From contig NW_021832563.1 of NCBI RefSeq assembly GCF_006345805.1, positions 1-64,000 on the forward strand: a stretch of DNA of 64,000 bases, given 5' to 3'. This DNA comes from Octopus sinensis (taxonomy: Eukaryota). Below the pieces are notes generated by a model. The model was not told the origin of the DNA. It did no database searches and worked only from the letters and a program-made list of their open reading frames with translations. The position numbers and the translations under genes are program-made. Of this stretch, positions 9,321-63,264 are shown in pieces; the stretch's first letter is position 1, and every line of letters starts with the position of its first letter.

Positions 9321-9533
9321 TGTTGTTGCTGTCTTTGTTTGCGGGCCATGTGATCCTGTCGTATGGTATTTAACTATAATACATTCAGGGAAATGTGGCA
9401 AATTGTCACCCTCGTCAGAGCATTACGGTAAAATGCATTGCGAAAATTGCTCTGGTTTTTTAAACTATGAGTTCAAATACCGCCTTGGTAAATTTTGTAA
9501 ATCCTATGAGGGACGATAAATATCCTCCCACAA

Positions 9534-9762
9534 GGCGGCGAGCTGGCAGGAACGTTAGCACGCCGGACGAAATGCGCAGCCGTATTTCGTCTGCCGTTAC
9601 GTTCTGAGTTCATATTCCGCCGAGGTCGACTTTGCCTTTCATCCTTTCGCGGTCGATAAATTACGTACCAGTTACGTACTGGGGTCGATGTAATCGACTT
9701 AATCCGTTTGTCTGTCCTTGTTTGTCCACTGTGTTTAGCCCCTTGTGTGCAGTAAAGAAATA
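9534..9762 (+). mobile_element. tRNA-derived SINE family C (Deu/Nin-domain-like), complete
   Basis: Head GAGCTGGCAGG...GAGTTCATATTCC; core GAGGTCGACTTTGCCTTTCATCCTTTC..GGTCGATAAA resembles the Deu/Nin domain (from memory); tail CTGTGTTTAGCCCCTTGTG. Confidence 0.85.
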
Positions 9763-13202: not shown

Positions 13203-16200
13203 TTACAGATTTACGCTTAAAATAGTGTCGTCTTTCATACTGACCATTTTTGTCACTTTTACCCACTTTTTATTAAAACATTCGTTCGACAAAGCCTTCC
13301 TCTCTATTCTCATCCTCCTTTTCAAGTGGTACTTGGAAAAGTTGACGAGAGACTGACCAGAGAGGAAGGTGTTTGTTTGCGGTCCTTTCAAACGCATCCA
13401 CCACACACATTACTTCGCCATAGCCATCAGCGTAACGAAAACCGTTTTCCCTTCCCGTTTAAAGGAAGGTGGTGGAACAAAATACACGATAGACTCGGCC
13501 GATAGGCGGTCCCGTCCTACACGTGACAACAGCTGTTCGACGAACCCCACAGCTCTGAAATATCTGGACACTGCACGAGTGCGTGCAGAACGGTTTCGTC
13601 GCTCTGACCGCATCTCGGGCAGGTCGGTCCGGTGGTGGGTTTCGAATCGTGCCTGTAGCTCTTCTCTCGAACAGGTAGTGCGTCTCGATAGCATTACCAA
13701 GCCAGGGATATTTGGAAGTTATCCATAGGCCCGAACGTCGTCCTGAACAGGCGGGTTAGGAATTTCTCGTCGACGCTCAGATCTGCCCCGAGTGTGTCGT
13801 CGGACCTCCCCTCCACTAGTCCTCTATAGAACACGTTGGTCGTTTGGAAGTTGTACAAGTTTAATCCCGGGCGGCAGAGCTGCTGTAGAGCTTGGCGACA
13901 CTCTCGGTGTCAATCGCCCAGTTTCGGTCTCTTTCTGATCCATGTTTGCAGTTCGGTCAGTGAGACGAGCTGCAGGAAGGCGCGCCTCACAAACGGCGCC
14001 CACACCTTTTCACCGTCGTCGATGAATTTCCAGAGATGCCGCAGTCTCAGCGCATGCCTGCGCATCATTAACCACGGCATGCCCAGTCCTCCATTTAACG
14101 GATGTTGACAGCAAATGGATCGCCTCACCGTCGGAACGCCACCCTTCCACAGGAAGCAGAAGAGTATGCGTTCTAATTTCGTGATAGTAGCATCGGAACA
14201 AGGCACGACGGTCAGGCGGTAATCGATGACGGATGTGATATACGCATTAGCCACCTCCGCCCGACCTTTTAGAGACAGATTTCTCTCGGCCCATGTTTGG
14301 CTGAGAGCGACCACTCTACTCGTGATCTCGTCCCAGTTCTTATCCATTTAGAGGTCCAGACTGAACCAGACCCCGATCAATTTAACCGGTCCGTCCGTCC
14401 AGCGTCCCACTACTGAGTCGCTGTTGGGCGGCATGGGCTTGCATCTCCAGGTGCCGAGTAGCAAACCCACTGACTTTTCCGGGTTAATGTTCGCTCCCTT
14501 CGCCGTTTCGTATTCTTTTAACGTCTCGCCTATCATCTTGATGTGTTTGTCGCTCGACACTATGACGGTGACATCGTCCGCATATGCCGACACGTTCGTC
14601 CCGCAACCCAGTTCCCGTGGGATGTCCCTCAGTGTCGCCATCTTCCGCAGTAGCGGCTCGAGAGTCAATACATACAGAAGCGCCGACAGGGGACATCCCT
14701 GGCGGACCGAACTCGTGATGTCAAACGGTTTCGACAGGTGACCGGTCACCCGAATTACCGATCGGATGCCGCAATACAAGGCAGCGATCCAACCGCGGAA
14801 GACGGGACCGAAGCCAGCCGCCCTGAGGACGGCCGCCAAGTACTGATGGTCGACCCTATCGAAGGCTTTAGACTGATCCAAATTGATCAGCGCCCCACCC
14901 ATGCCAGGATCCTTAACTACCCTGTCCACGATGTAGCGCATCAGATGGAGGTTGTCATGGATGGTTCTGCCCGGCACGGCGCATGTTTGCGCCTTGTCGA
15001 TCAGCTTATCGTTTTGTTGCCAGTTGCAGTAGACTGATGCCAATAGGTCGCCAAAGAAGTCTGGCGTTTGACAATACAGCTCGTAGGGTAGACCATCAAA
15101 ATCAGGCGACTTATCCCTCGCGCAGCCCACCATCGCATCCCGTACGTCGGCAGCTGTGATGGGTCTCTCACAACACTCTGCTTCTCTTGCAGGCCGGTCA
15201 GGTAGGCACTGAAGTTCTTCCTGCATTCCGACCCACCACTCGCAGCAAACAGTCGAGCAAAGTGCTGTTGAAAGGCCTCACACATCCTTTCGGGTTCGAG
15301 TAAATTGCATCCCTGTTGATCTATTAGAAACCGAATGGTGGCTCTGTTGCCACGATGCGCCTCCGCTACCCGGGCCTCTCGCGCAGCTTTGATCCCTTCG
15401 TTCCTCAAGGCACGCATTTTAGTTCTGACGACGCAAACTTCGTGTTTGGCGTTGAGGTGTTGGTCGAGGGCCATCCTCGCAGCCAGCACGCTGGTTGCGC
15501 TGCCAGTGGTAAGTGCCTCTTCTAGTTTCTTAACTAAGTCTCCCTCTGCTCTATTTCGATGTATCGCTAATTCCTTGCAAAGCCTAATTGATTCCGATTT
15601 TATTGCCATTTTCAGAGCAAACCACCAGCGGTTGTTAACGATGGCTCCCGTTAACTCCCTCTTAATTAACTCGCAAATCCGGTTCCTGTAAACCTGCCGC
15701 GCTCAGAGCGACGTGTTCAGTTTCCAGTAACCGGGACCCTGCCTATGTGTCTTATCTAAGTCGAGCGTACACGTCACAAATTTGTGATCTGTGTAGCTGA
15801 CAATTTTAAATTGTGGACATCCTATACTATCTCTATCCTCTGTCCTAGATAGAACTCTATCTAGATACGATCTCGACGATCCGACGCGGTTTGTCCAAGT
15901 CCACGTTGGCACATTCGGATGGTCGAGACAAATGGAAACGTCTGAGCAGGTCTTTGAAGCACTTACATCCCCTTCTCTTACTATCCATTCCCACATAATC
16001 TAGATGCGTGTCCAAGGTAGCGTTCCAATCCCCTACTAACAGTAAAAGTCTAGACATTACCAGGAAAACTTCTAGATGTCTGAAGAAATCCGCCCGACCC
16101 GTTAAGGACGGTGCATACACTGCCATCAGACGGAATGCACACCCATTTCTGCCATCCACGTCCAAGACAACCAGCCTACCCTCCGGGTCTAGGAATATTG

Positions 16201-16460
16201 ATCTTACTTTGACGTTTAGACTCTTTCGAAAAAGCACCGCGGTACCTCCACCACCCATGCTTTGCAGACAGGAAGAAAAATAAATGTCGAATTGACTGCC
16301 AAACATGGATGCGAGGGCCCGCGGCTTACTGAGTCTGGTTTCACTGATAGCTACTATATCCACGTTCAGTGACTTGATGTCGTTTAGAAGGTAACCTTGC
16401 TTCCAAGCCGACGCCAAGCCACGCACATTCACACAACCTAATTTAAGTATTATTGATGGT
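13203..16460 (-). pseudogene. Tx1-like ORF2 (APE endonuclease, reverse transcriptase, zf-RVT), frameshifted with an internal RT deletion
   Basis: NVRGL..DIVAISETR, LLVGDWN, SYLDR, SYTDH (APE); LDQSKAFDRVDH, VRQGCPLSALLY, AYADDVTV (RT); CPRCGQSDETVLHALVQC near 13550-13610. Split over track ORFs 15857..16432, 15703..15996, 15001..15609, 14348..15226, 13910..14347, 13410..13700, 13203..13406. Confidence 0.93.
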
Positions 16461-16504
16461 CGAAAATTTGTTTCACAAACAACAGTGAAAGAGACGAGAG
16501 GGAA

Positions 16505-18503
16505 TGTTACTTACTCATTTCGAAAGTTTGAGTAGTTTCCTCCTCTTTTGGGATGTCTTTGAGGAGGTACTTAAAAAGTTTTTTTTGATAAATACTTCTG
16601 GAACCCCCTGACCGTATTTGGAAAGAGGGTTTTGAGTGTGTTGTGCTGCGTTTGTGTGAAGTGTACTATTTTTATGTGTGTCGGTGGTGTAGTGCGTGGA
16701 TGGCTGTTCAGTTTATAGACATCTTCACAAACGTTTGTGTGAGATGCGATGTGGTTCATTAGTTTTGTATTTTCTGTGTCTATTGCTGTTTGTTTTTTTG
16801 TTTTGTTTTTGCGGTGTTGTTGTTGGTTTGTATGTGTAAGGGACTATCAGGAGTTATATATCTCCCTGCTTTACCTGTATTTGCTTGTTTCGTGGGTTTT
16901 TTTAGTCTTTTCCTTTCTCCCCTGTGGCTATTTGCCATTCTGTCGAACTTTCCTCGTTAGACGAAAAGTCTGACGAATCAGAAGGGGGTAAAGGCAAAGC
17001 GTTTGCATCTATATGTGTGTTTTTTGAAGGTGTTGTTGTTTTGTGTGGTGTTTGTGTTGTTGGGGTATTAGGGGCAGAATTTGTCTTTTCGTCATTGTTA
17101 TTTGTTTTCTTGGTTGTTGTTCTTGGTGCTGGTGTTGGTGTTGGTCTGTATTTTGATGTTGGTGGTGATGTTTTTCTAGTTGATTGCGATGTCGAAGGTA
17201 ATTGGTGATGTGGTTGGTGAAGGGGAAACAGTTTTTGCATCGTCTGCTATTTTTCCTGTCTTTTGCGTTGAAGGTGGTGTGGGTAGCAGAGGTTTTCTTC
17301 CAGGTTTTGGGAGTGGTTGCAGTTGCTGTTGCCTATTTCTGGCAGCAGTTGGGCAATCATATCTAAAGTGTGCCTCACTGTTGCACAAATAGCATCTTGG
17401 CCTCCTGCCCTCCACCACTGCATACAATTTTCGGTCTTTTGTCTGTTGAACACTGGTTGGTAAATTATTTATTGCTTCTTGAGAGATTTGAAGCATTATT
17501 TCAAGCGACATTCCAGAGGAAAGCTGGACTGGTAAAAGCCAGTCCAGCTTTCCTCTGGAATGGCGGCGATTTCTAAAATATCTGCTTCTTCTATATTGAA
17601 GCAGATGGCCGACACCAGCCACTGGATATCCACTTCTAGAGGAACATTGTTTATTTTTATTTTCGTTACTCTGCGCCCAAGGTAGCTAGGTACCATTGTT
17701 ACCTGGTCTGTGCGCAGAGTAAGCGTCGAAAACTTCTTCTCTAATTCTTCCGTATGGAAGTGGACTTGCACGGTAGCAAATTTACACCCCCAATTCACAT
17801 AATTTCGGAACTTCCACACAGAAGCGAGGCACTTCTCAATCTTTTCTGCAGCTGGGCTTTCTGGTTTCTTTGTTTTGGTGTTAAGTATTTTGTAGATGAT
17901 TGTCTTCTTTTGTGCCTCTTCCAAAATGTTACGTGGGATATTTAGGTGTATTGTGTCGCCTTCTTTGGTGAGTAAAGATTTTGTTTCCTGTATTTGTTGT
18001 GCAGTAAATTTTAAAATTCTCCGTTTCGGTCTTATTGCCTCCGCGAAATTTGTCTTGTTTTTGTGGTGGTGGTGGTGGTGGTGTTGGTGGTGATGTTTGT
18101 GGCAGAGTCGTTCGTAGTAGAAGATGACTGTGAAGCTGTCGTCGGGTTGTTTACCAGTTTTTGTGTGGCGGTGGCGGTGTTAGCGTCCATGCTCACACTT
18201 GCGCCTGTGTTGCTTTTCCCCTTCTCCCCTCCTTCAGGAAATTGTGGTGAAGGCGGTGTAGGGAAATCAACGTCGTAAGGAGGGTGTCGGTGTTGATGGT
18301 GGAATCATTGGTGGCGGTGACGGTGAATGGCCTTGCGACCTTGGTTTTGTAGTTGTTAAGTTGTTGATGCTGATGGTGGTGGTGGTGGTGGTGCTAGTGG
18401 CGTTCAAACTGTAAGGTTCAGCGTATAGTGGAAGGGAATCTTGCTCTTTTGTTTCGGCGTCACGCTTGACTTACGTCTTGGCCTCGTGGTGACCAGTAGC
18501 CAT
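16505..18503 (-). pseudogene. Tx1-like ORF1 (gag-like; RRM-like region and CCHC zinc knuckle), disrupted
   Basis: AAAAATGG start at 18503 with an early stop; RRPRCYLCNSEAHFRYDCP in ORF 17176..17622; RRM-like segment in 17496..17924; T/P/K-rich low-complexity flanks. Confidence 0.8.
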
Positions 18504-27140: not shown

Positions 27141-27156
27141 TATATATATACATATA

Positions 27157-27563
27157 GGCGCAGGAGTGGCTGTGTGGTAAGTAGCTTACTAACCAACCAC
27201 ATGGTTCCAGGTTCAGTCCCACTGCGTGGCATCTTGGGCAAGTGTCTTCTGCTATAGCCCCGGGCCGATCAAAGCCTTGTGAGTGGATTTGGTAGACGGA
27301 AACTGAAAGAAGCCTGTCGTATATATGTATATATATATGTATGCGTGTGTGTGTTTGTGTGTCTGTGTTTGTCCCCCTAGCATTTCTTGACAACCGATGC
27401 TGGTGTGTTTACGTCCCCGTCACTTAGCGGTTCGGTAAAAGAGACCGATAGAATAAGTACTGGGCTTCCAAAGAATAAGTCCCGGGGTTGATTTGCTTGA
27501 CTAAAGGCGGTGCTCCAGCATGGCCGCAGTCAAATGACTGAAACAAGTAAAAGAGTAAAAGAG
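27157..27563 (+). mobile_element. tRNA-derived SINE family B, complete
   Basis: Box A TGGCTGTGTGG, box B-like GGTTCAGTCC, internal (TA/TG) tract, tail (AAAAGAGT)n; about ten copies in the window. Confidence 0.9.
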
Positions 27564-29095: not shown

Positions 29096-29456
29096 TAAAA
29101 TAACAGAATATATATATATTCCGATATATATATATTATATATATATAATATTATATAATATAATATATATAGTATATATATTATATATATATATTATATA
29201 TATATAATATATATAGTAATATATAATATATATTACATATATATATATATATATCTAAATATATTTTAGATTATGTTTGTCGACAGGTTTTACTTTCGCT
29301 AATCATGACATTGAAATTATTGTAATTTCGTATTTTCTGAAGAAGATTTTAGTCCATGTGTGTGGTGGAGAAGTTACGAATGAAACTTAGTTTATATATA
29401 CGTTAAGGAGGTTAAAATATCTTCTAATGAAATTTATATATATATATATATATATA

Positions 29457-29621
29457 GGCGCAGGAGTGGCTGTGTGGTAAGTAGCTTGCTAACCAACCAC
29501 ATAGTTCCGGGTTCAGTCCCACTGCGTGGCATATTGGGCAAGTGTCTTCTACTATAGCCCTGGGCCGACCAATGCCTTGTGAGTGGATTTGGTAGACGGA
29601 AACTGAAAGAAGCCCGTCGTA

Positions 29622-29659
<38 letters not shown>

Positions 29660-29897
29660 TGTGTGTGTATATGTTTGTGCGTCTGTGTTTGTCCCCCTAG
29701 CATTGCTTGACAACCGATGCTGGTGTGTTTACGTCCCCGTCACTTAGCGGTTCGGCAAAAGAGACCGATAGAATAAGTACTGGGCTTACAAAGAATAAGT
29801 CCCGGGGTCGATTTGCTCGACTAAAGGTGGTGTCCTAGCATGGCCGCAGTCAAATGACTGAAACAAGTAAAAGAGTAAAAAATTAAAAGAGTAAAGA
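29457..29897 (+). mobile_element. SINE family B, complete
   Basis: Near-identical to 27157-27563. Confidence 0.9.
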
Positions 29898-34424: not shown

Positions 34425-34902
<478 letters not shown>

Positions 34903-35999: not shown

Positions 36000-36165
36000 T
36001 TTCTACATCGACCCCAGTAATTCACTGGTACTTAATTTAACGACTCCGAAAGCATAAAAGGCAAAGTCGACTTCAGCGGGATTTGAAATCAGAACATAGC
36101 GGCAAACGAGATACCGCGCTAAGCATTTCGCCCGGCGTGCTAACGATTCTGCCAGCTCGCCGCCT
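36000..36165 (-). mobile_element. SINE family C
   Basis: Reverse complement of head and core. Confidence 0.8.
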
Positions 36166-36324
36166 TAATAATAATTATACTAATAATAATAATAATAACA
36201 ATAATAATAATAGCAATAATAATAACAATAATAATAATAATAATAATAATGATAATAATAATACTACTACTACTAATAATAATGATGATGATGATGATGA
36301 TGATGACGATGATGATGACGGTGG

Positions 36325-38265: not shown

Positions 38266-38298
38266 GTTACTTATAGCCCATAGAAACTGGCTAAAGAA

Positions 38299-38530
38299 GG
38301 CGGTGAGCTGGCAGAATCGTTAGCACTCCGGGCGAAATACTTAGCGGTATTTCATCTGCCGTTACATTCTGAGTTCAAAATCCGCCGAGGTCACCTTTGC
38401 CTTTCATCCTGTTGGGGTCGATAAATTAAGTACCAGTTGCTTACTGGAGTCTATCTAATCGACTTAATCCCTTTGTCTGTGCTTGTTTGTCCCCTCTGTG
38501 TTTAGCCCCTTGTGGCCAATAAAGAAATAA
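38299..38530 (+). mobile_element. SINE family C, complete
   Basis: Colinear with 9534-9762; tail CTGTGTTTAGCCCCTTGTGGCCAATAAAGAAATAA. Confidence 0.9.
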
Positions 38531-38672
38531 GAGACTGGCTAAACAAAAATCTGCACCTTCCACAGTGAGCCGATCAACCCCTCATCACCATCTTCTCTTT
38601 ATAAAACTTTGTTGTGTAAGGTCGGAACAATGTGTAAAGTAAACTACAAATAGAAAAGAAAACAAAAATTAC

Positions 38673-43647: not shown

Positions 43648-44043
43648 TTTGTACTTGTTTCAGTCATTTGACTGCGGCCATGCTGGAGCACCGCCTTTGT
43701 CGAGCAAATCGACCCCGGGACTTATCTTTGTAAGCCCAGTAGTTATTCTATCGGTCTCTTTGCCGAACCGCTAAGTGCCGGGAACGTAACACAAACCACC
43801 ATCGGTTGTCAAACGATGCTAGGGGGACAACACGAGATCCACAACACGCACACAATATATATATATACATATATAGGAACGGGCTCTTTTCAGTTTCCGT
43901 CTACCAAAATCCACTCACAAGGCATTGGTCGGCCCGGGGCTATAGCAGAAGACACTTGCCCAAGATGGCACGCAGTGGGACTGAACCCGGAACCATGTGG
44001 TTAGTTAGCAAGCTACTTACCACACAACCACTCCTCTGCGCCT
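43648..44043 (-). mobile_element. SINE family B
   Basis: Reverse complement of 27157-27563. Confidence 0.9.
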
Positions 44044-44080
<37 letters not shown>

Positions 44081-44399: not shown

Positions 44400-45070
44400 G
44401 CATGCACGTTGACAGTTGCTGTATTGGATCCATTTCTCATCATATGTTAGAATTCGATTCAAAAATGATTAATTTTTGTGACGAGAAAGTAGCATAATGC
44501 AGGCTTCCAAACGTTGCTGTTTCTGATTTTCATTGAGTTCATGTGGAACCCACTTATCCAACCTTTTTCCTTTACCGATTTAAACTAGGTAAGTCAATAT
44601 TGTTTGCTTGTTAACACCAAACAACTTGAGATGGATCTGACTCGACAGTAGCTTTCAGTTTGTCATTATCCACCTTCGTTTCTGGTCGACCGTGTTGCTC
44701 ATTTGTGAGGTCAAAGTTACCAGAACGAAATTTTGCGAACCAATTTGGTACTGCCTGCTGTGTAATAACATTGGAATGAAATACTCCATTGACATTCCGA
44801 ACTGTTAGTGATGCTGTTTTTCCAAGAAAGAACACATATTTCAAAACTGTACGAATTTCCGACTTATCCATCTCTAAACAAAAATAGCAAACAAAAAGAA
44901 AACCGATTTATAAATACTTTATAAAGTGCAAACTGAGTTAGAACAAAGAAATAGATGTGTCAGCTTTCTAACAAAAAACAAAGATTGCCAAAATATAATA
45001 ATGGCGTAAAATGAGCAGCTGTCAAAATTTACCATATACCTTACTACAAATTTCATACTTGGCGACCTAA
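44400..45070 (-). mobile_element. mariner transposon relic (5' TIR, HTH, WVPHEL)
   Basis: ORF 44611..44871 is a Mos1-type HTH; KWVPHELNENQKQQRL and ILTYDEKWI at 44420-44560; TIR TTAGGTCGCCAAGTATGAAA ends at 45070. Confidence 0.88.
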
Positions 45071-46389: not shown

Positions 46390-46800
46390 TACTCTTACTC
46401 TTTTACTGTTTTACTTGTTTCAGTCATTTGACTGCGACCATGCTGGAGCCCCGCGATTTCGTCGAATAAATCGCCCCCAGCACTTATTCTTTGTAAGCCT
46501 AGTACTAATTCTATCGTACCCTATTGCCGAACCACTTTGTTACTGGGACGTAAACACACCAACATCGGTTGTCAAGCAATGGTGGGCTAGAGAAACACAG
46601 ACATACAAATAGACACACATACACACACACACATATACGACGGGCTTCTTTCAGTTTCTGTCCATCAAATTCATTCACAAGTCTTTGGTTGGCTCTAGGC
46701 TATAGTAGAAAACACTTGCCTAATGTACCACGCAAGGGGACTGAACCCGGAACCATGTGGTTGGTAAGCAAACTTCATGCCACACAGCCACTCTTTCACC
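46390..46800 (-). mobile_element. SINE family B, degraded
   Basis: Reverse complement of family B body and head. Confidence 0.85.
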
Positions 46801-46853
46801 TTTATACGTACAAACATACATACATACATATATACATATATATTACATCATAC

Positions 46854-47309: not shown

Positions 47310-47592
47310 GTAGATATATCCTCTTAACTTTTGTTTCACTGCGGCGCAGCTGGAGTACGTCTTCTAAGGTTTTACTTGATAAAAAAGAACTCAGTTCTTT
47401 TTTTTAACTCTGATACTTGTTCTATCAATTTCCTACCCTAAAAAAACCGCTAAGTAGTTACGGTAATGAAAATTAAGCAATACCGTGTCTGAGGGTGTCG
47501 GCGACAAAAAAGCACAAAACAACCACGTGTATTTATAACATATGTATATATATATATATATGTAATACATATATATATACACACACACACAC

Positions 47593-47661
<69 letters not shown>

Positions 47662-47981
47662 AGCCCTAATTATATAATGTAAAATTTTGAATTCGCCTTA
47701 AACGGTCCTTTTACATACTGAACACTTGGTGAAATTGATTAATTAATTAATTTTACCCTCAATTGTTGATATTATAATTCATTTCTTCGGTCATACTGCC
47801 TCGGTTCTCGCGGTTAAAATATAATGTTTGCTAGATAGACCACGTGGGTGGAAGCGGATTGAAGAAATTTACGCCTGCGCATTTTGAATTTGTTGACACT
47901 GTTAGTCGGAGTGGTTCATCTGAAGCGATAACTTCGCTGATAGGTAAAGTTCCTTCTTTTTAGTGTTTCCAATCCAAATTA

Positions 47982-48056
47982 AGAAATTTTGAGCTGACGA
48001 TAGAAATGCTGATTTTATTTGGCTAATCTTGAAACGTTGACGTACTCAAACGATCT
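47982..48056 (+). ncRNA. Type I hammerhead ribozyme, unit 1
   Basis: Stem I UUUGAG/CUCAAA (+3x3 internal loop +AGA/UCU), CUGACGA 47994-48000, stem II 48001-30, GAAA 48031-34, stem III ACGU-UG-ACGU, predicted cleavage after GUA at 48044. Confidence 0.8.
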
Positions 48057-48544
48057 ATGTACTTGTGATATTTTTCTGTATTTACCTCCAAACCTTCGTG
48101 GGCTGTCTAGAGTAAACATTATCTGAGAGAAATTTTCTTTAAGTTGTAGAAATGCTAAGAAAATTTTTTTTGGCTGCTATTTCTACTAAGTTCAGTATGT
48201 GGCAAAGTAATTTATTTTACTAAGCCCTAATTATATAATGTAAAATTTTGAATTCGCCTTAAACGGTCCTTTTACATACTGAACACTTGGTGAAATTGAT
48301 TAATTAATTAATTTTACCCTCAATTGTTGATATTATAATTCATTTCTCTCGGTCATACTGCCTCGGTTCTCGCGGTTAAAATATAATGTTTGCTAGATAG
48401 ACCACGTGGGTGGAAGCGGATTGAAGAAATTTACGCCTGCGCATTTTGAATTTGTTGACACTGTTAGTCGGAGTGGTTCATCTGAAGCGATAACTTCGCT
48501 GATAGGTAAAGTTCCTTCTTTTTAGTGTTTCCAAATCCAAATTA

Positions 48545-48619
48545 AGAAATTTTGAGCTGACGATAGAAATGCTGATTTTATTTGGCTAATCTTGAAACGT
48601 TGACGTACTCAAACGATCT
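48545..48619 (+). ncRNA. Type I hammerhead ribozyme, unit 2
   Basis: Identical core; CUGACGA 48557-63, GAAA 48594-97, predicted cleavage after 48607. Confidence 0.8.
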
Positions 48620-49095
48620 ATGTACTTTGATATTTTTCTGTATTTACCCCCAAACCTTCGTGGGCTGTCTAGAGTAACATTCTGGAGAAATTTTCTTTAG
48701 TTGTAGAAATGCTAAGAAAATTTTTTTGGCTGCTATTCTACTAAGTTCAGTATGTGGCAAAGTAATTTATTTTACTAAGCCCTAATTATATAATGTAAAA
48801 TTTTGAATTCGCCTAAATGGTCCTTTTACATACTGAACACTTGGTGAAATTGATTAATTAATTAATTTTACCCTCAATTGTTGATATATAATTCATTTCT
48901 CTCGGTCATACTCCCTCGGTTCTCGCGGTTAAAATATAATGTGCTAGATAGACCACGTGGGTGGAAGCGGATTGAAGAAATTTACGCCTGCGCATTTTGA
49001 ATTTGTTGACACTGTTAGTCGGAGTGGTTCATCTGAAGCGATAACTTCGCTGATAGGTAAAGTTCCTTCTTTTTAGTGATTCCAAATCCAAATTA

Positions 49096-49170
49096 AGAAA
49101 TTTTGAGTTGACGATAGAAATGCTGATTTTATTTGGCTAATCTTGAAACGTTGACGTACTCAAACGATCT
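49096..49170 (+). ncRNA. Type I hammerhead ribozyme, unit 3 (C3U variant)
   Basis: UUGACGA 49108-14 instead of CUGACGA; GAAA 49145-48; GUA ends at 49158. Confidence 0.65.
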
Positions 49171-49401
49171 ATGTACTTGTGATATTTTTCTGTATTTACC
49201 TCCAAACCTTCGTGGCTGTCTAGAGTAAACATTATCTGAGAGAAATTTTCTTTAAGTTGTAGAAATGCTAAGAAAATTTTTTTGGCTGCTATTTCTACTA
49301 AGTTCAGTATGTGGCAAAGTAATTTATTTTACTAAGCCCTAATATATAATATATATATATATATAATATATATATATTATATATATATTATATATATATG
49401 A

Positions 49402-50420
49402 ACGAGAGGTGCTCATTAAATATTTCTTCTGACCCACGTCAACATATTGCAGGAAACGCTATTTGTGCAGGTACAATCATACATAAATTGCACTTTTCCA
49501 CTATTAATTCTTTGTCTTTTACGGCTGCTGAAGTGGACAAAAGTGCTATAATGGGGGCAATTGAATAGAGATCAGTGATCAGGCTCTTATACTTGAAAGG
49601 TCGTACGCCAAAGGAGACCTTCGATGAAATGAAAGAATTTTATGGTGACGATGCAGCATCATATGATGTAATCAAGCACCGGCATCACCAGTTCAAATGC
49701 GGTTGGATATCGGTGGAAACTACTCTTATTCCTGGACGACCACATTCCGCCATTGATGACAACAGCGTCCATAATGGGGAAGTCGTTATTATGGGAGATC
49801 ACCGCGTAACTCCTGGGCAACTAGAAATGAAGCTAAGTGTGGGGTCCGTGGAAAAATATCATTCTCGGTCATTTGTATATGCATGCTGATGTTGTCTGTA
49901 CGGTGGATTTCCTGGATGCTCATACCTTTTCAGAAGTAGGAACGAGTCAGTTGCGCCCAGGATCTTTTGACACATGTGCCAAGAAAAGGTCTTTTTCGTC
50001 AGACATATCACACAGGGTCCATCACTATGATCCTGAGACTAAACTCCAGTCGAAGCAATGGAAGCTTGATAACTAACCACAACCAAAAAAGGCTCATGCC
50101 CAACCCTCAGCAGGCAAGGTGATGCTCACAGTGTTTTGGGACCAGCGCGGAGTAGTGATGATGGATTTTCTGGCAAATGTACCACAATTAATAGGGAATA
50201 TTATGCTTCTCTGATGCAGAAATTGCAGGGCGCCATCAAAGCAGAGGTGCGGCATGCTGACCAAAGGAGTCAAACTCCTCCGAGACAACGGCCCAGTTCA
50301 CAATGCGCATCTTGCCCAGATGAAGGCATACTCCTGCAGCTATGAAATCCTTCCTCATCTCCTTACTCTCCCGACTTCGCACTATTTCCTCATCTCCTTA
50401 CTCTCCCGACTTCGCACTAT
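49402..50420 (+). mobile_element. mariner transposon relic
   Basis: IRLLYLKGRTPKETFDEM (HTH), VHHYDPETKLQSKQW, AGKVMLTVFWDQRG, LRDNGPVH, PYSPD; many frameshifts. Confidence 0.88.
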
Positions 50421-50599
50421 TCCTCACCTATATGGTGGCTGCCCCCTCGTTATCGAGTATGGCCATTGCACGAAGCTTAACCAATGTTGTTATCGTGCAA
50501 TGCCTGTGCAAGAAGATTTTTTTTTAAAGTGAGGAAAGGCTGTGCACTGAGTCAATCCCACTCACTAAGCAACAGCAGCCATAATCCGAAAAGAAGAAC

Positions 50600-56072: not shown

Positions 56073-56286
56073 ACTCGCGTACTCATACGACTGTCCGTCG
56101 TCTCCGTTAGACCCGATTTTATATTTATGAATATTTTCCAAAATTTGTCGGGGAAATACATAACTATGAGTTTTATATATCTCTTCATTTTCGAACAATT
56201 GTCCGATAACGAGAAAACGATTTGGTTATATGATTTCTTTAAATCCAGGAATACTTTCTGTTAATAATTAAAATTTCTTTGTGGGT

Positions 56287-56490
56287 GTCGAGCTGGCAGA
56301 ATCATTAGCACGCCGGACAAAGTACGTAGCGGCGTTTCGCCCGTCTTTCCGTCCTCTGTTCAAATTCAGCCAAACTCGACTTGCCTTTTATCCTTTCTGG
56401 GTCGATAAAATAGGTACCAGTGGAGTACTGGGGTCAATGTAATCGACTTACTCCTTCCTCCGAAAATGGTTCCTTGGGCCAAAATTTGAG
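56287..56490 (+). mobile_element. SINE family C, degraded
   Basis: gagctggcagaatcattagcacgccgg head and core. Confidence 0.8.
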
Positions 56491-61743: not shown

Positions 61744-62802
61744 GTGTGTGTATATATATATACATATATATGCATATCTATATCTATAGACACTCACACC
61801 TCATACACACACAAACACACACACACATATATATGTATGCCTATATGTATATATCATCTGTGTTTGCCATCCCATCCCGTCATCACTTGACTACCGCTGT
61901 TGGCTCGTTTATGTTCCCCTAACTTAATGGTTTCACAAACGCGATCGATAGAATGAGTACCAGACATAAAAATAACAGAAACAAAGCTAAGTACTGAGGT
62001 GCCCCAGTATGGCCGCAGTGAAAGGGCTGAAACACGTAAGGCATACCACAGTAGTGATGGGTGGAGAGAAAGTTGAACATGATTGTGAGCTAGAGGAATA
62101 ATTCAGAACATGTTTCTGCCTAATAGACCCTTCTTAGTGAAACCCAGTCCACTTAATAGCTTCGGAGTTCTCGAAATAAGTAATTAAAGAACATTCAAAG
62201 ATTGGACAAATTAGGATAATGGTACAGGGAAATTTCTCACCGGGGTTCTCTGCATTGAAAAGCATGTCGCTAAGTGCAGGTTAACATTGTTAATATGTTG
62301 AGCTGGAATAATTTATGAATTGATCAACTGATATTTTCGCCAAAATTCGATAACGAGTAAAACCTCATGAGCGTTATGTTGTTCCGTTGGTGCGTTGTTG
62401 GTTGAGCTGTTGATGCATAAAACCCAAGTGTGTACATCTATTTACATAAGAATCTCAGATGGAAAATCTTCGGAATGTCTTACAATTGTTCACTGCGACA
62501 TTAATAGATTGGATTCAGAGAACCCGCGCCAGATTAGTTTGCTATTTCTCCGTGAAACCAAGATTTTTCAAGGTTTTTGTGAAAAGGTACAGACGAGAAT
62601 TCATAGTCAGAGTACAAGAGCTGCAAGTTCAGCATTAATTCAACATAACTGTTCTGTTTTTCAGGGACTTTTGACGGTTTCTAACCTAGATTCAACCTAG
62701 ATTGCAGAGGGCAGCCACACAGCAGACATGTTAGAACTGTGAGCATGTATGTATGCATGTATGTATATATGTATCATTGTATGTGTGTATGTATGCATTC
62801 TT

Positions 62803-63208
62803 TTATCCTTTTATTTGTTACAGTCGTTTTGACTGCGGCCATGTTGGAGCACCGACTTTATTCGAGCAAGTCGAACCCAGGACTTATTCTTTGTAAGCCT
62901 AGTACTTATTCTATCGGACTACTTTACCGAACCGCTACTTTACGGGGACTTAAACACACCAGCAGCAGTTTTCAAGCTGTGTTGAGGGGGGGGGGGCAAA
63001 CACAGGCGCACAATCATACACCCCACACGCAAACATATATACACGACAGGCTTCTTTCAGTTTCCTTCTACTAAATTCACTCACAAGGCTTTGGTCGGCT
63101 TGAGGCTATAGTAGAAGACACTTGCCCAAGCTGCTACGTAGTGGGACTGAACCGGGAACCATGTGATTTGTAAGCAAGCTAGTTACCACGCAGCCACTCT
63201 TGCGCCTA
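62803..63208 (-). mobile_element. SINE family B
   Basis: Reverse complement of 27157-27563. Confidence 0.88.
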
Positions 63209-63264
63209 TATGTATGTATATATGTATGTTTGGTGTGTGTTTGTTTGTGTGTGTGTGTATGTAC

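What the first reader, a model, noticed from the sequence alone, without database searches (positions are those of the whole stretch)
47661..49343. Retrozyme-like tandem array: three ~560-bp non-coding units, each carrying a type I hammerhead ribozyme
Seen: three near-identical head-to-tail units (starts 47661/48222/48777) with no ORF. Each has, at the same position, a full hammerhead: 6-bp stem I (UUUGAG/CUCAAA) extended past a 3x3 internal loop, CUGACGA, a closed stem II, GAAA, a palindromic stem III (ACGU-UG-ACGU) and a GUA cleavage triplet. Predicted cuts after 48044, 48607 and 49158 would release monomers of 563 and 551 nt. Known: non-LTR retrozymes are tandem repeats with type I hammerheads. 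They self-cleave into monomers that circularise, and are thought to be mobilised by Penelope-like RTs. Palindromic stem IIIs favour dimeric (double-hammerhead) cleavage. Inference: this is a cephalopod retrozyme family making a ~560-nt circRNA, longer than the animal retrozyme units I recall. I do not know of it being described. Caveats: the 10.1/11.1 pair is a non-canonical U.U, and unit 3 has C3U.
Basis: partly seen in the sequence, partly recalled or inferred. Interest (0 to 1): 0.95.

Follow-up and report, generated by a model that had tools for sequence, protein, structure and literature searches.

The report
Hammerhead-ribozyme tandem repeat in an octopus-like genome
Three near-identical ~560-bp non-coding repeats each carry a self-cleaving hammerhead RNA motif, which makes this a probable new octopus-lineage member of the known "retrozyme" class of circular-RNA mobile elements, though it is not yet shown to cleave.

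Summary
Window 47661-49343 is a head-to-tail array of 3.02 units (561/555/557 bp, 97-98% identical). It is non-coding, 34% GC, and sits inside a (TA)n microsatellite. Each unit carries a type I hammerhead layout at the same offset: a 6-bp helix I, CUGACGA, a closed but weak helix II, GAAAC, the quasi-palindromic helix III ACGUUGACGU, and a GUA cut site.

- **Core:** units 1 and 2 meet the field's catalytic-centre rule (CUGANGA/GAAAY/RUH). Unit 3 has C3U.
- **Chance:** a looser descriptor found nothing else in the window and nothing in 40 Mb of composition-matched random sequence.
- **Precedents:** published, cleavage-tested retrozyme hammerheads share the odd features. Axolotl Rtz_353 has the U.U closing pair and a GUA site. 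The coral ribozyme has a 10-nt palindromic helix III.
- **Dimer:** the predicted dimer fold is an exact double hammerhead.

Against:
- No Rfam hammerhead model matches, even at E<=10.
- My own small model was not significant.
- No further copies could be fetched, so core conservation and covariation are untested.

Verdict: probably a genuine non-LTR retrozyme-type element, a new member of a known kind. The ~560-nt unit size is not exceptional, since 51-972 bp has been reported. Interest is moderate.

The parts
47661..49343 (+). Whole tandem array: 3 full units plus the first 10 nt of a fourth
47661..48221 (+). Unit 1 (561 bp)
   Evidence: 98.0% identical to unit 2
48222..48776 (+). Unit 2 (555 bp); carries several 1-4-nt deletions in its 3' third
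48777..49333 (+). Unit 3 (557 bp)
   Evidence: 97.0% identical to unit 2
49334..49343 (+). Partial fourth unit AAGCCCTAAT, merging into (TA)n
47988..48050 (+). Hammerhead 1 with an intact core; helix I extension spans 47982-48056
48551..48613 (+). Hammerhead 2 with an intact core, identical in sequence to hammerhead 1
49102..49164 (+). Hammerhead 3, with C3U at 49108 (probably crippled)
48045..48607 (+). Predicted 563-nt monomer released by cuts after A48044 and A48607; strongly self-paired
   Evidence: linear fold z = -4.64; circular fold z = -4.1, 64% of bases paired
48608..49158 (+). Predicted 551-nt monomer; its 3' cut depends on the C3U hammerhead
   Evidence: circular fold z = -2.3
47540..47660 (.). 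Left flank: (TA)n/(CA)n microsatellite abutting the array
49344..49399 (.). Right flank: (TA)n microsatellite abutting the array

Best explanation
This is a non-LTR retrozyme-type element in an octopod-like genome: a short tandem array of a ~560-bp non-coding unit that carries a type I hammerhead ribozyme on the + strand.

Proposed mechanism. Only the sequence anatomy is shown; everything else is inferred from the published retrozyme model.
1. The array is transcribed as a multimer.
2. The hammerheads cut after GUA (A48044, A48607). They most likely act as pairs, because the quasi-palindromic helix III (ACGUUGACGU) forms a 10-bp duplex between two ribozymes, while the single-ribozyme fold is a minor conformer.
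3. The 563/551-nt linear monomers, which carry a 5'-OH and a 2',3'-cyclic phosphate, fold into a highly paired structure. They are then circularised by a host RtcB-type ligase or by self-ligation.
4. The circle is copied in rolling-circle fashion by the reverse transcriptase of a Penelope-like element. The resulting multimeric cDNA is inserted at a (TA)n microsatellite.

Units 1 and 2 look cleavage-competent but slow. Unit 3 (C3U) is probably inactive.
For: - **Core and helix layout:** they satisfy the field's own criterion CUGANGA/GAAAY/RUH (quoted) in two of the three units.
- **Chance:** the motif is far rarer than chance would give. For a 560-bp unit I estimate a chance motif this good at about 6e-6.
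- **Shared features with cleavage-validated retrozyme hammerheads (sequences):**
  - All have a 6-bp helix I.
  - All have a self-complementary helix III: coral ACAGUACUGU, mussel ACGCGCGU, axolotl ACACGUGU and ACAUGU.
  - Axolotl Rtz_353 has U.U at 10.1/11.1 and a GUA site, as here, and it cleaves.
- **Dimer fold:** the predicted dimer MFE is exactly a double hammerhead with unpaired cores. Its ddG is -8.8 kcal/mol, against -8.8 for coral and -10.5 for Ax353 under the same protocol.
- **Family traits:** tandem repeats, GC 34% (<45%), and no coding capacity.
- **Self-pairing:** the monomers fold with z = -4.1 and -2.3. Validated retrozymes give -0.9 to -3.1 under the same protocol.
- **Insertion site:** the array lies inside (TA)n, which covers only 4.5-7.5% of the window. 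(TA)n is a reported preferred target of Naiad PLEs, which cephalopods carry.
- **Mobilising elements:** O. vulgaris has 31 recently active PLE families, 30 of them of the Penelope type.
Against: - No Rfam hammerhead family matches at any threshold tried.
- A covariance model built from four validated retrozyme hammerheads scores the motif at only 11.7 bits (E about 0.5), below four spurious hits.
- The 10.1/11.1 pair is U.U. Helix II is long (30 nt) and weak, and the hammerhead fold is only about 0.6% of the monomer ensemble.
- The motif fold is no more stable than shuffles (z = -0.43).
- The minus strand folds about as significantly as the plus strand, so the self-pairing is not strand-specific.
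- There are only three copies and none elsewhere in 64 kb. No PLE ORF was found among the window ORFs tested.
- No cross-copy conservation, transcription or cleavage data exist.
Confidence: 0.65

Rival explanations
1. Dead relic: the unit descends from a hammerhead-bearing retrozyme or from a Penelope-like pseudo-LTR, but the ribozyme no longer cleaves. The array is now just a small, decaying tandem repeat.
For: The motif shows a U.U closing pair, a weak and elongated helix II, C3U in unit 3, and failure of all Rfam models. There are only 3 units and no other copy in the window.
Against: Units are 97-98% identical, so the array is young. Eleven of eleven invariant core positions plus H17 are intact in two units. 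The same U.U is tolerated in axolotl Rtz_353.
Confidence: 0.18
2. Coincidence: an ordinary tandem duplication or minisatellite, formed by replication slippage or unequal crossing-over next to a microsatellite, that happens to contain a hammerhead-like string.
For: No independent model recognises the motif. The motif's fold energy is unremarkable. The first-stage scan may have read many windows. The region is extremely rich in simple repeats.
Against: The estimated chance of a motif this good is about 5e-9 per site, with 0 hits in 40 Mb of matched random sequence. The idiosyncratic details match validated retrozyme ribozymes: a 6-bp helix I, a self-complementary 10-nt helix III, and U.U plus GUA as in Ax353.
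Confidence: 0.12
3. Assembly artefact: the copy number, or some of the differences between units, is produced by mis-assembly or uncorrected long-read errors. The real locus may have more or fewer units.
For: Differences between units are dominated by small indels: about 13 indel events against about 5 true substitutions. That pattern is typical of noisy long-read consensus.
Against: An artefact would not create the hammerhead motif, and at least one unit must be real. The units differ at distinct sites, so this is not a collapsed or expanded perfect repeat.
Confidence: 0.05

Closest known systems
Metazoan non-LTR retrozymes (Cervera & de la Pena, NAR 2020, PMC7229834)
   Same: Head-to-tail repeats of a few hundred bp, low GC (<45%), no ORF, one type I hammerhead per unit, a highly self-paired monomer RNA, and co-occurrence with Penelope-like elements in the host lineage.
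   Different: The unit of 551-563 nt exceeds the ~170-400 nt of that paper, but lies within the 51-972 bp of the 2026 preprint. Helix II is 30 nt with an internal loop, against about 13 nt. No Rfam hammerhead model matches here. There is no expression or cleavage data.
Axolotl retrozyme Rtz_353 / HHR_Amex2
   Same: U.U mismatch at the base of helix II, a GUA cleavage triplet, a 6-bp helix I, a self-complementary helix III, and a predicted double-hammerhead dimer.
   Different: A vertebrate element with a 353-bp unit and GC about 51%. Helix II is short (3 bp plus a 5-nt loop). Copy number is about 60,000. There is no sequence similarity outside the core.
Coral Acropora millepora retrozyme hammerhead (Amil224)
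   Same: Helix III is a 10-nt self-complementary stretch drawn as 4 bp plus a 2-nt 'loop' (ACAGUACUGU, against ACGUUGACGU here). Helix I is 6 bp. The predicted dimer ddG is identical at -8.8 kcal/mol.
   Different: The coral ribozyme has a canonical G-C at 10.1/11.1, a 4-bp helix II and conserved loop-loop nucleotides. It cleaves fast (about 0.8 per min), and its unit is 220-240 bp.
Mussel Mytilus galloprovincialis retrozymes
   Same: Same phylum (Mollusca), AT-rich (37% GC), and a hammerhead lacking most canonical loop 1/loop 2 contact nucleotides.
   Different: Units of 350-390 bp in about 5000 copies. There is no detectable sequence similarity to this unit. Helix II is short and canonical.
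Minimal hammerheads in pseudo-LTRs of Penelope-like elements
   Same: Type I topology, action as dimers, tandem or partial-tandem insertions, microsatellite target bias, and a proposed evolutionary source of retrozymes.
   Different: Those sit next to an RT/GIY-YIG ORF. They are described as atypical minimal variants, which I recall as having much shorter helices. Here helix I is 6 bp, helix III is 3-4 bp, and no PLE ORF was found among the window ORFs tested.

Membership tests
Non-LTR retrozyme (metazoan) | Head-to-tail tandem repeats of a short (tens to hundreds of bp) unit | tested here: met
   3.02 units of 555-561 bp, 97-98% identical
Non-LTR retrozyme (metazoan) | Each unit carries a type I hammerhead with the catalytic centre CUGANGA / GAAAY / RUH and an open helix I | tested here: met
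   CUGACGA / GAAAC / GUA in units 1 and 2; unit 3 has C3U at 49108. The criterion is quoted.
Non-LTR retrozyme (metazoan) | Perfect helix topology, including a Watson-Crick 10.1/11.1 pair | tested here: not met
   U.U at 10.1/11.1 and a 3x3 internal loop in helix II. The same U.U occurs in the active axolotl HHR_Amex2.
Hammerhead ribozyme (Rfam clan) | Match to an Rfam hammerhead covariance model | tested here: not met
   No hammerhead family at gathering score, at E<=10 in 2 kb or in 101 nt
Non-LTR retrozyme (metazoan) | Match to a covariance model built from validated retrozyme hammerheads | tested here: inconclusive
   Model R1 (4 seed sequences): 11.7 bits, E about 0.5, ranked 5-6 in the window. 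The model is dominated by the helix I sequence of its seeds.
Non-LTR retrozyme (metazoan) | Low GC (<45%) and no coding capacity | tested here: met
   GC 34%. Longest stop-free stretch is 63 aa, with no homologues.
Non-LTR retrozyme (metazoan) | Monomer RNA is highly self-paired | tested here: met
   Circular-fold z = -4.1 and -2.3, with 62-64% of bases paired. Validated retrozymes give z = -0.9 to -3.1 under the same protocol. The minus strand is similar, so this is not strand-specific.
Non-LTR retrozyme (metazoan) | Loop 1 / loop 2 tertiary contact of canonical type I hammerheads | tested here: inconclusive
   Two 3x3 internal loops lie 6 bp (helix I) and 4 positions (helix II) from the core. 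No conserved contact nucleotides could be checked. Mussel retrozyme ribozymes also lack them.
Non-LTR retrozyme (metazoan) | Many genomic copies, with the ribozyme core conserved and the helices covarying | not testable with these tools
   No other copy in the window, in metagenome contigs, via predicted proteins, or in 52 kb of fetched loci. No cephalopod genome can be searched by DNA here.
Non-LTR retrozyme (metazoan) | Self-cleavage, and linear plus circular unit-length RNA in tissues | not testable with these tools
   Needs in vitro transcription and Northern blot, RNase R or RNA-seq data
Non-LTR retrozyme (metazoan) | Co-occurrence with autonomous Penelope-like elements in the same genome | tested here: inconclusive
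   None among the window ORFs tested. O. vulgaris has 31 recently active PLE families, and cephalopods carry Naiads. The window's exact species is unknown.
Penelope-like element pseudo-LTR | Repeat flanks an RT + GIY-YIG ORF and carries a minimal hammerhead | tested here: not met
   The only RT in the window is a LINE (RVT_1 plus an exo/endo/phosphatase endonuclease) about 32 kb away. The neighbours are decayed mariner copies. The hammerhead here has full-length helices.
C/D box snoRNA | C box RUGAUGA and D box CUGA brought together by a terminal stem | tested here: not met
   Only 10-14-bit Rfam hits against gathering scores of 40-50. There is no CUGA D box before the 3' stem strand.

The most novel reading that the evidence does not exclude
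An active cephalopod retrozyme lineage whose hammerhead is a structural variant invisible to all current Rfam models. It would have a U.U closing pair and a long helix II whose 3x3 internal loop, rather than a terminal loop, docks onto the matching 3x3 internal loop of helix I. It would work as a double hammerhead, yield abundant ~560-nt circular RNAs in octopus tissues, and be inserted at (TA)n microsatellites by Penelope-like or Naiad machinery primed on the unit's own TA-rich segment, where both array ends lie.
Probability: 0.2. Interest if true: 0.55.

Novelty: new member of a known kind. Interest (0 to 1): 0.35.

Why it matters
If real, it extends HHR-bearing circular-RNA retroelements to cephalopods. 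These genomes are about two-thirds repeats and carry active Penelope-like elements, yet no ribozyme or retrozyme has been reported there in the literature I could search. It also gives a concrete example of a likely hammerhead that every Rfam model misses, so standard genome annotation would undercount such elements. Finally, it offers a natural ~560-nt scaffold for studying or engineering ribozyme-made circular RNAs. It does not change the known picture of how retrozymes work.

Tried and rejected
- **Rfam at three stringencies:** no hammerhead. The only hits were low-complexity miRNA look-alikes in the flanking (TA)n/(CA)n and 10-15-bit snoRNA/pseudoknot noise. The snoRNA reading is rejected because there is no D box.
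- **Own covariance model from four published retrozyme hammerheads:** not significant. The model over-weights the seeds' helix I sequence.
- **Finding more copies:**
  - A concatenate of all stop-free translations of the unit against 5.8 billion proteins gave nothing.
  - Two exact or degenerate pattern scans of JGI metagenome contigs gave nothing.
  - Exact-protein look-ups of flanking ORFs were not on record.
  - The loci fetched through TE proteins were L001 (JGI), L002 (ENA) and L003 (O. vulgaris chromosome OX597816.1). None has a copy, and L003 is not the orthologous site.
- **tRNA/SINE origin:** ARAGORN found no tRNA.
- **Strand asymmetry of RNA structure:** rejected as evidence. The z-scores of the two strands are similar, and the lower plus-strand energy reflects G+U richness.
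- **Sequence homology to coral, mussel or axolotl retrozymes:** none beyond chance.
- **Supplementary tables of the 2026 preprint and the O. vulgaris repeat paper:** no usable sequences.
- **Conservation of the hammerhead relative to the rest of the unit:** 1 variable column in 63 nt, against about 3 expected. With three copies there is no statistical power.

Full report

Yes. Direct-repeat families with start-to-start spacings of about 551-562 nt tile 47660-49343. MAFFT of the three units gives 97% mean column identity. blastn with unit 2 finds only the three units (98.0% and 97.0% identity) and nothing else in the 64 kb. TRF missed the array because its period limit is 500.

The array is 3 full units (561, 555 and 557 bp) plus the first 10 nt of a fourth. 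It is 34% GC. The longest stop-free stretch is 63 aa, and a concatenate of all stop-free translations has no homologue among 5.8 billion predicted proteins.

**2. The hammerhead motif**

Read directly, the motif in units 1 and 2 is:

UUUGAG / CUGACGA / U-AGA-AAU-GCUGA-UUUUAU-UUGGC-UAA-UCU-U / GAA / ACGUUGACGU / A | CUCAAA

- All eleven invariant core positions plus H17 are present.
- The motif meets the catalytic-centre criterion used by the group that defined retrozymes, CUGANGA/GAAAY/RUH (quoted).
- H17 is at 48044 and 48607 and, by register, at 49158.
- Unit 3 has C3U at 49108.
- Helix II is closed but weak: a U.U pair, 3 bp, a 3x3 loop, then 5 bp that include two G.U pairs.
- Helix I continues as AGA/UCU beyond a 3x3 loop.

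**3. Is it more than chance?**

- My descriptor required helix I >=5 bp, helix II >=3 bp allowing a mismatched closing pair, helix III >=3 bp, and an exact core. It finds only these sites in the window and none in 40 Mb of order-2 Markov sequence with the window's composition.
- My analytic estimate is about 1 per 28 Mb for that descriptor and about 1 per 190 Mb for a motif as good as this one.
- That corresponds to roughly 6e-6 per 560-bp unit on both strands. Even a genome-wide scan of all tandem-repeat families would rarely give this coincidence.
- A pattern search with 100 shuffles gave zero matches.
- A much looser descriptor still found only these sites in the window plus 52 kb of other loci.

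**4. Tests that failed or were inconclusive**

No Rfam hammerhead family matches at gathering score, at E<=10 in 2 kb, or in a 101-nt stretch.
- I built a covariance model from four cleavage-validated retrozyme hammerheads: coral Amil224, mussel Mg353, and axolotl Ax353 and Ax330. The sequences come from the supplement of PMC7229834.
- That model scores the motif at only 11.7 bits (E about 0.5), behind four spurious local hits that match the seeds' helix I sequence. I treat this as inconclusive rather than negative.
- The likely causes of the low scores are the 30-nt helix II (about 13 nt in the seeds) and the U.U pair. This is inference.
- The 71-nt segment spanning the motif is no more stable than shuffles (z = -0.43), and the hammerhead fold is about 0.6% of the 63-nt core's monomer ensemble.

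**5. Comparison with validated retrozyme ribozymes**

This comparison is the most informative evidence.

- All four published ribozymes have a 6-bp helix I and a self-complementary helix III: ACAGUACUGU, ACGCGCGU, ACACGUGU and ACAUGU. Here it is ACGUUGACGU, a 10-bp self-duplex with two G.U pairs.
- Axolotl HHR_Amex2 (Rtz_353) has the same U.U mismatch at the base of helix II and the same GUA site. It cleaves 22% in one hour as a monomer and much more efficiently as a dimer.
- Under one folding protocol, the dimer MFE of the present motif is exactly a double hammerhead. It has an intermolecular 10-bp helix III, helix I formed in trans, helix II intact and the cores unpaired. Its ddG is -8.8 kcal/mol, against -8.8 for coral and -10.5 for Ax353.
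- The 563-nt monomer is strongly self-paired: z = -4.64 linear and -4.1 circular. The 551-nt monomer gives -2.3. The validated retrozymes give -0.9 to -3.1 under the same protocol.
- The minus strand is about as significant, so this reflects internal inverted repeats and is not strand-specific evidence.

**6. Surroundings and host**

- The array is embedded in a (TA)n/(CA)n microsatellite, at 47540-47660 on the left and 49344-49399 on the right.
- (TA)n covers 4.5-7.5% of the window, so this placement is mildly unlikely by chance.
- (TA)n is a reported preferred target of Naiad Penelope-like elements, which cephalopods carry.
- Both array ends fall in the unit's own TA-rich segment (CCCTAATTATATAAT). 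This fits priming of reverse transcription by microhomology with the target. That is my inference.
- The neighbours are decayed Mos1-type mariner copies at 44614-44907 (-) and about 49570-50530 (+). A LINE with an endonuclease and RVT_1 lies at 13.9-16.5 kb (-). No PLE ORF was seen among the ORFs tested.
- The host is octopod-like:
  - The mariner ORF is 80% identical to an Octopus vulgaris protein.
  - The window shares SINE-like families at 70-86% identity with an O. vulgaris chromosome locus.
  - The LINE RT's only named relative is from a cuttlefish.
- O. vulgaris has 31 recently active PLE families, and its 2026 repeat annotation mentions neither ribozymes nor retrozymes.

**7. What it most likely is**

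It is a non-LTR retrozyme-type element. The mechanism is inferred from the published model. The array is transcribed as a multimer, hammerheads cut after GUA (probably as pairs), and the monomers are circularised. A PLE reverse transcriptase then copies the circle in rolling-circle fashion, and the cDNA is inserted at (TA)n.

| Reading | Probability |
|---|---|
| Retrozyme-type element (best explanation) | 0.65 |
| Same ancestry but catalytically dead | 0.18 |
| Chance motif in an ordinary tandem duplication | 0.12 |
| Assembly artefact of copy number | 0.05 |

The artefact reading is prompted by the excess of small indels (about 13) over substitutions (about 5) between units.

**8. Novelty**

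The kind is known (PMC7229834 and the 2026 preprint 10.64898/2026.07.22.740005).

- The unit length is within the reported 51-972 bp, so it is not exceptional.
- The U.U pair and dimeric action have precedents.
- New points are the host lineage, since no report was found in searches, and a long, internally looped helix II that hides the motif from Rfam.

I rate it a new member of a known kind, of moderate interest.

**9. What could not be done**

No cephalopod genome could be searched by DNA with these tools. Copy number, conservation of the core, covariation and homology to PLE pseudo-LTRs therefore remain untested, as do transcription and cleavage.

Noticed in passing
window 47661-49343 (differences listed): Differences between the three units are mostly 1-4-nt indels (about 13 events), with only about 5 true substitutions. 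This suggests uncorrected long-read consensus errors or slippage rather than ordinary point divergence.
   Followed up: partly
window 47982-47987 / 48051-48056 and 48002-48007 / 48031-48036: The string AGAAAU ... AUCU occurs twice in the motif. Each time it forms an AGA/UCU helix closing a 3x3 internal loop, once in the helix I extension and once in helix II. The two internal loops lie at similar distances from the core and could be the tertiary contact partners.
   Followed up: no
window 48111-48133 with 48342-48394; 48672-48691 with 48895-48913: A long-range helix inside the monomer (AGUAAACAUUAU/AUAAUGUUUGCU plus CUGAGAGAAAU/AUUUCUCUCGG) is hit on both strands by deletions in the second monomer. 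There the G-to-C change at 48913 pairs with G48672 in the alternative fold. This may be quasi-compensatory or may be chance.
   Followed up: partly
window 44614-44907 (-) and 49569-50530 (+): Two decayed Mos1-type mariner copies flank the array. Both have HTH_48, and the downstream one also has a weak Transposase_1 hit and frameshifts. The upstream ORF is 80% identical to an Octopus vulgaris hypothetical protein.
   Followed up: partly
window 13910-16510 (-); L001: A LINE with an exo/endo/phosphatase endonuclease and RVT_1 ORF pieces. It is 74.6% identical at the DNA level over 1.6 kb to a JGI metagenome contig (sample 3300037598), so cephalopod-like DNA is present in that metagenome.
   Followed up: partly
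window 27148-27561, 29453-29880, 34427-34689, 43652-44045, 46410-46804, 62800-63220; also 9532-9762, 36004-36170, 38296-38535, 56284-56454: Two interspersed SINE-like families recur many times in the window. They match an O. vulgaris chromosome locus (L003) at 69-86% identity.
   Followed up: no
window 62100-62143 (-): A weak hit of my retrozyme-hammerhead model (13.2 bits, E about 0.17) resembles the axolotl-type motif, but G5 and G8 are replaced (CUAAGAA). It is either chance or a dead relic.
   Followed up: partly
whole window: Simple-repeat density is extreme: more than 186 TRF rows in 64 kb, mainly (TA)n, (TAA)n, (TATC)n, (CAC)n and (TGG)n. Most long 'ORFs' are translations of these repeats.
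   Followed up: no
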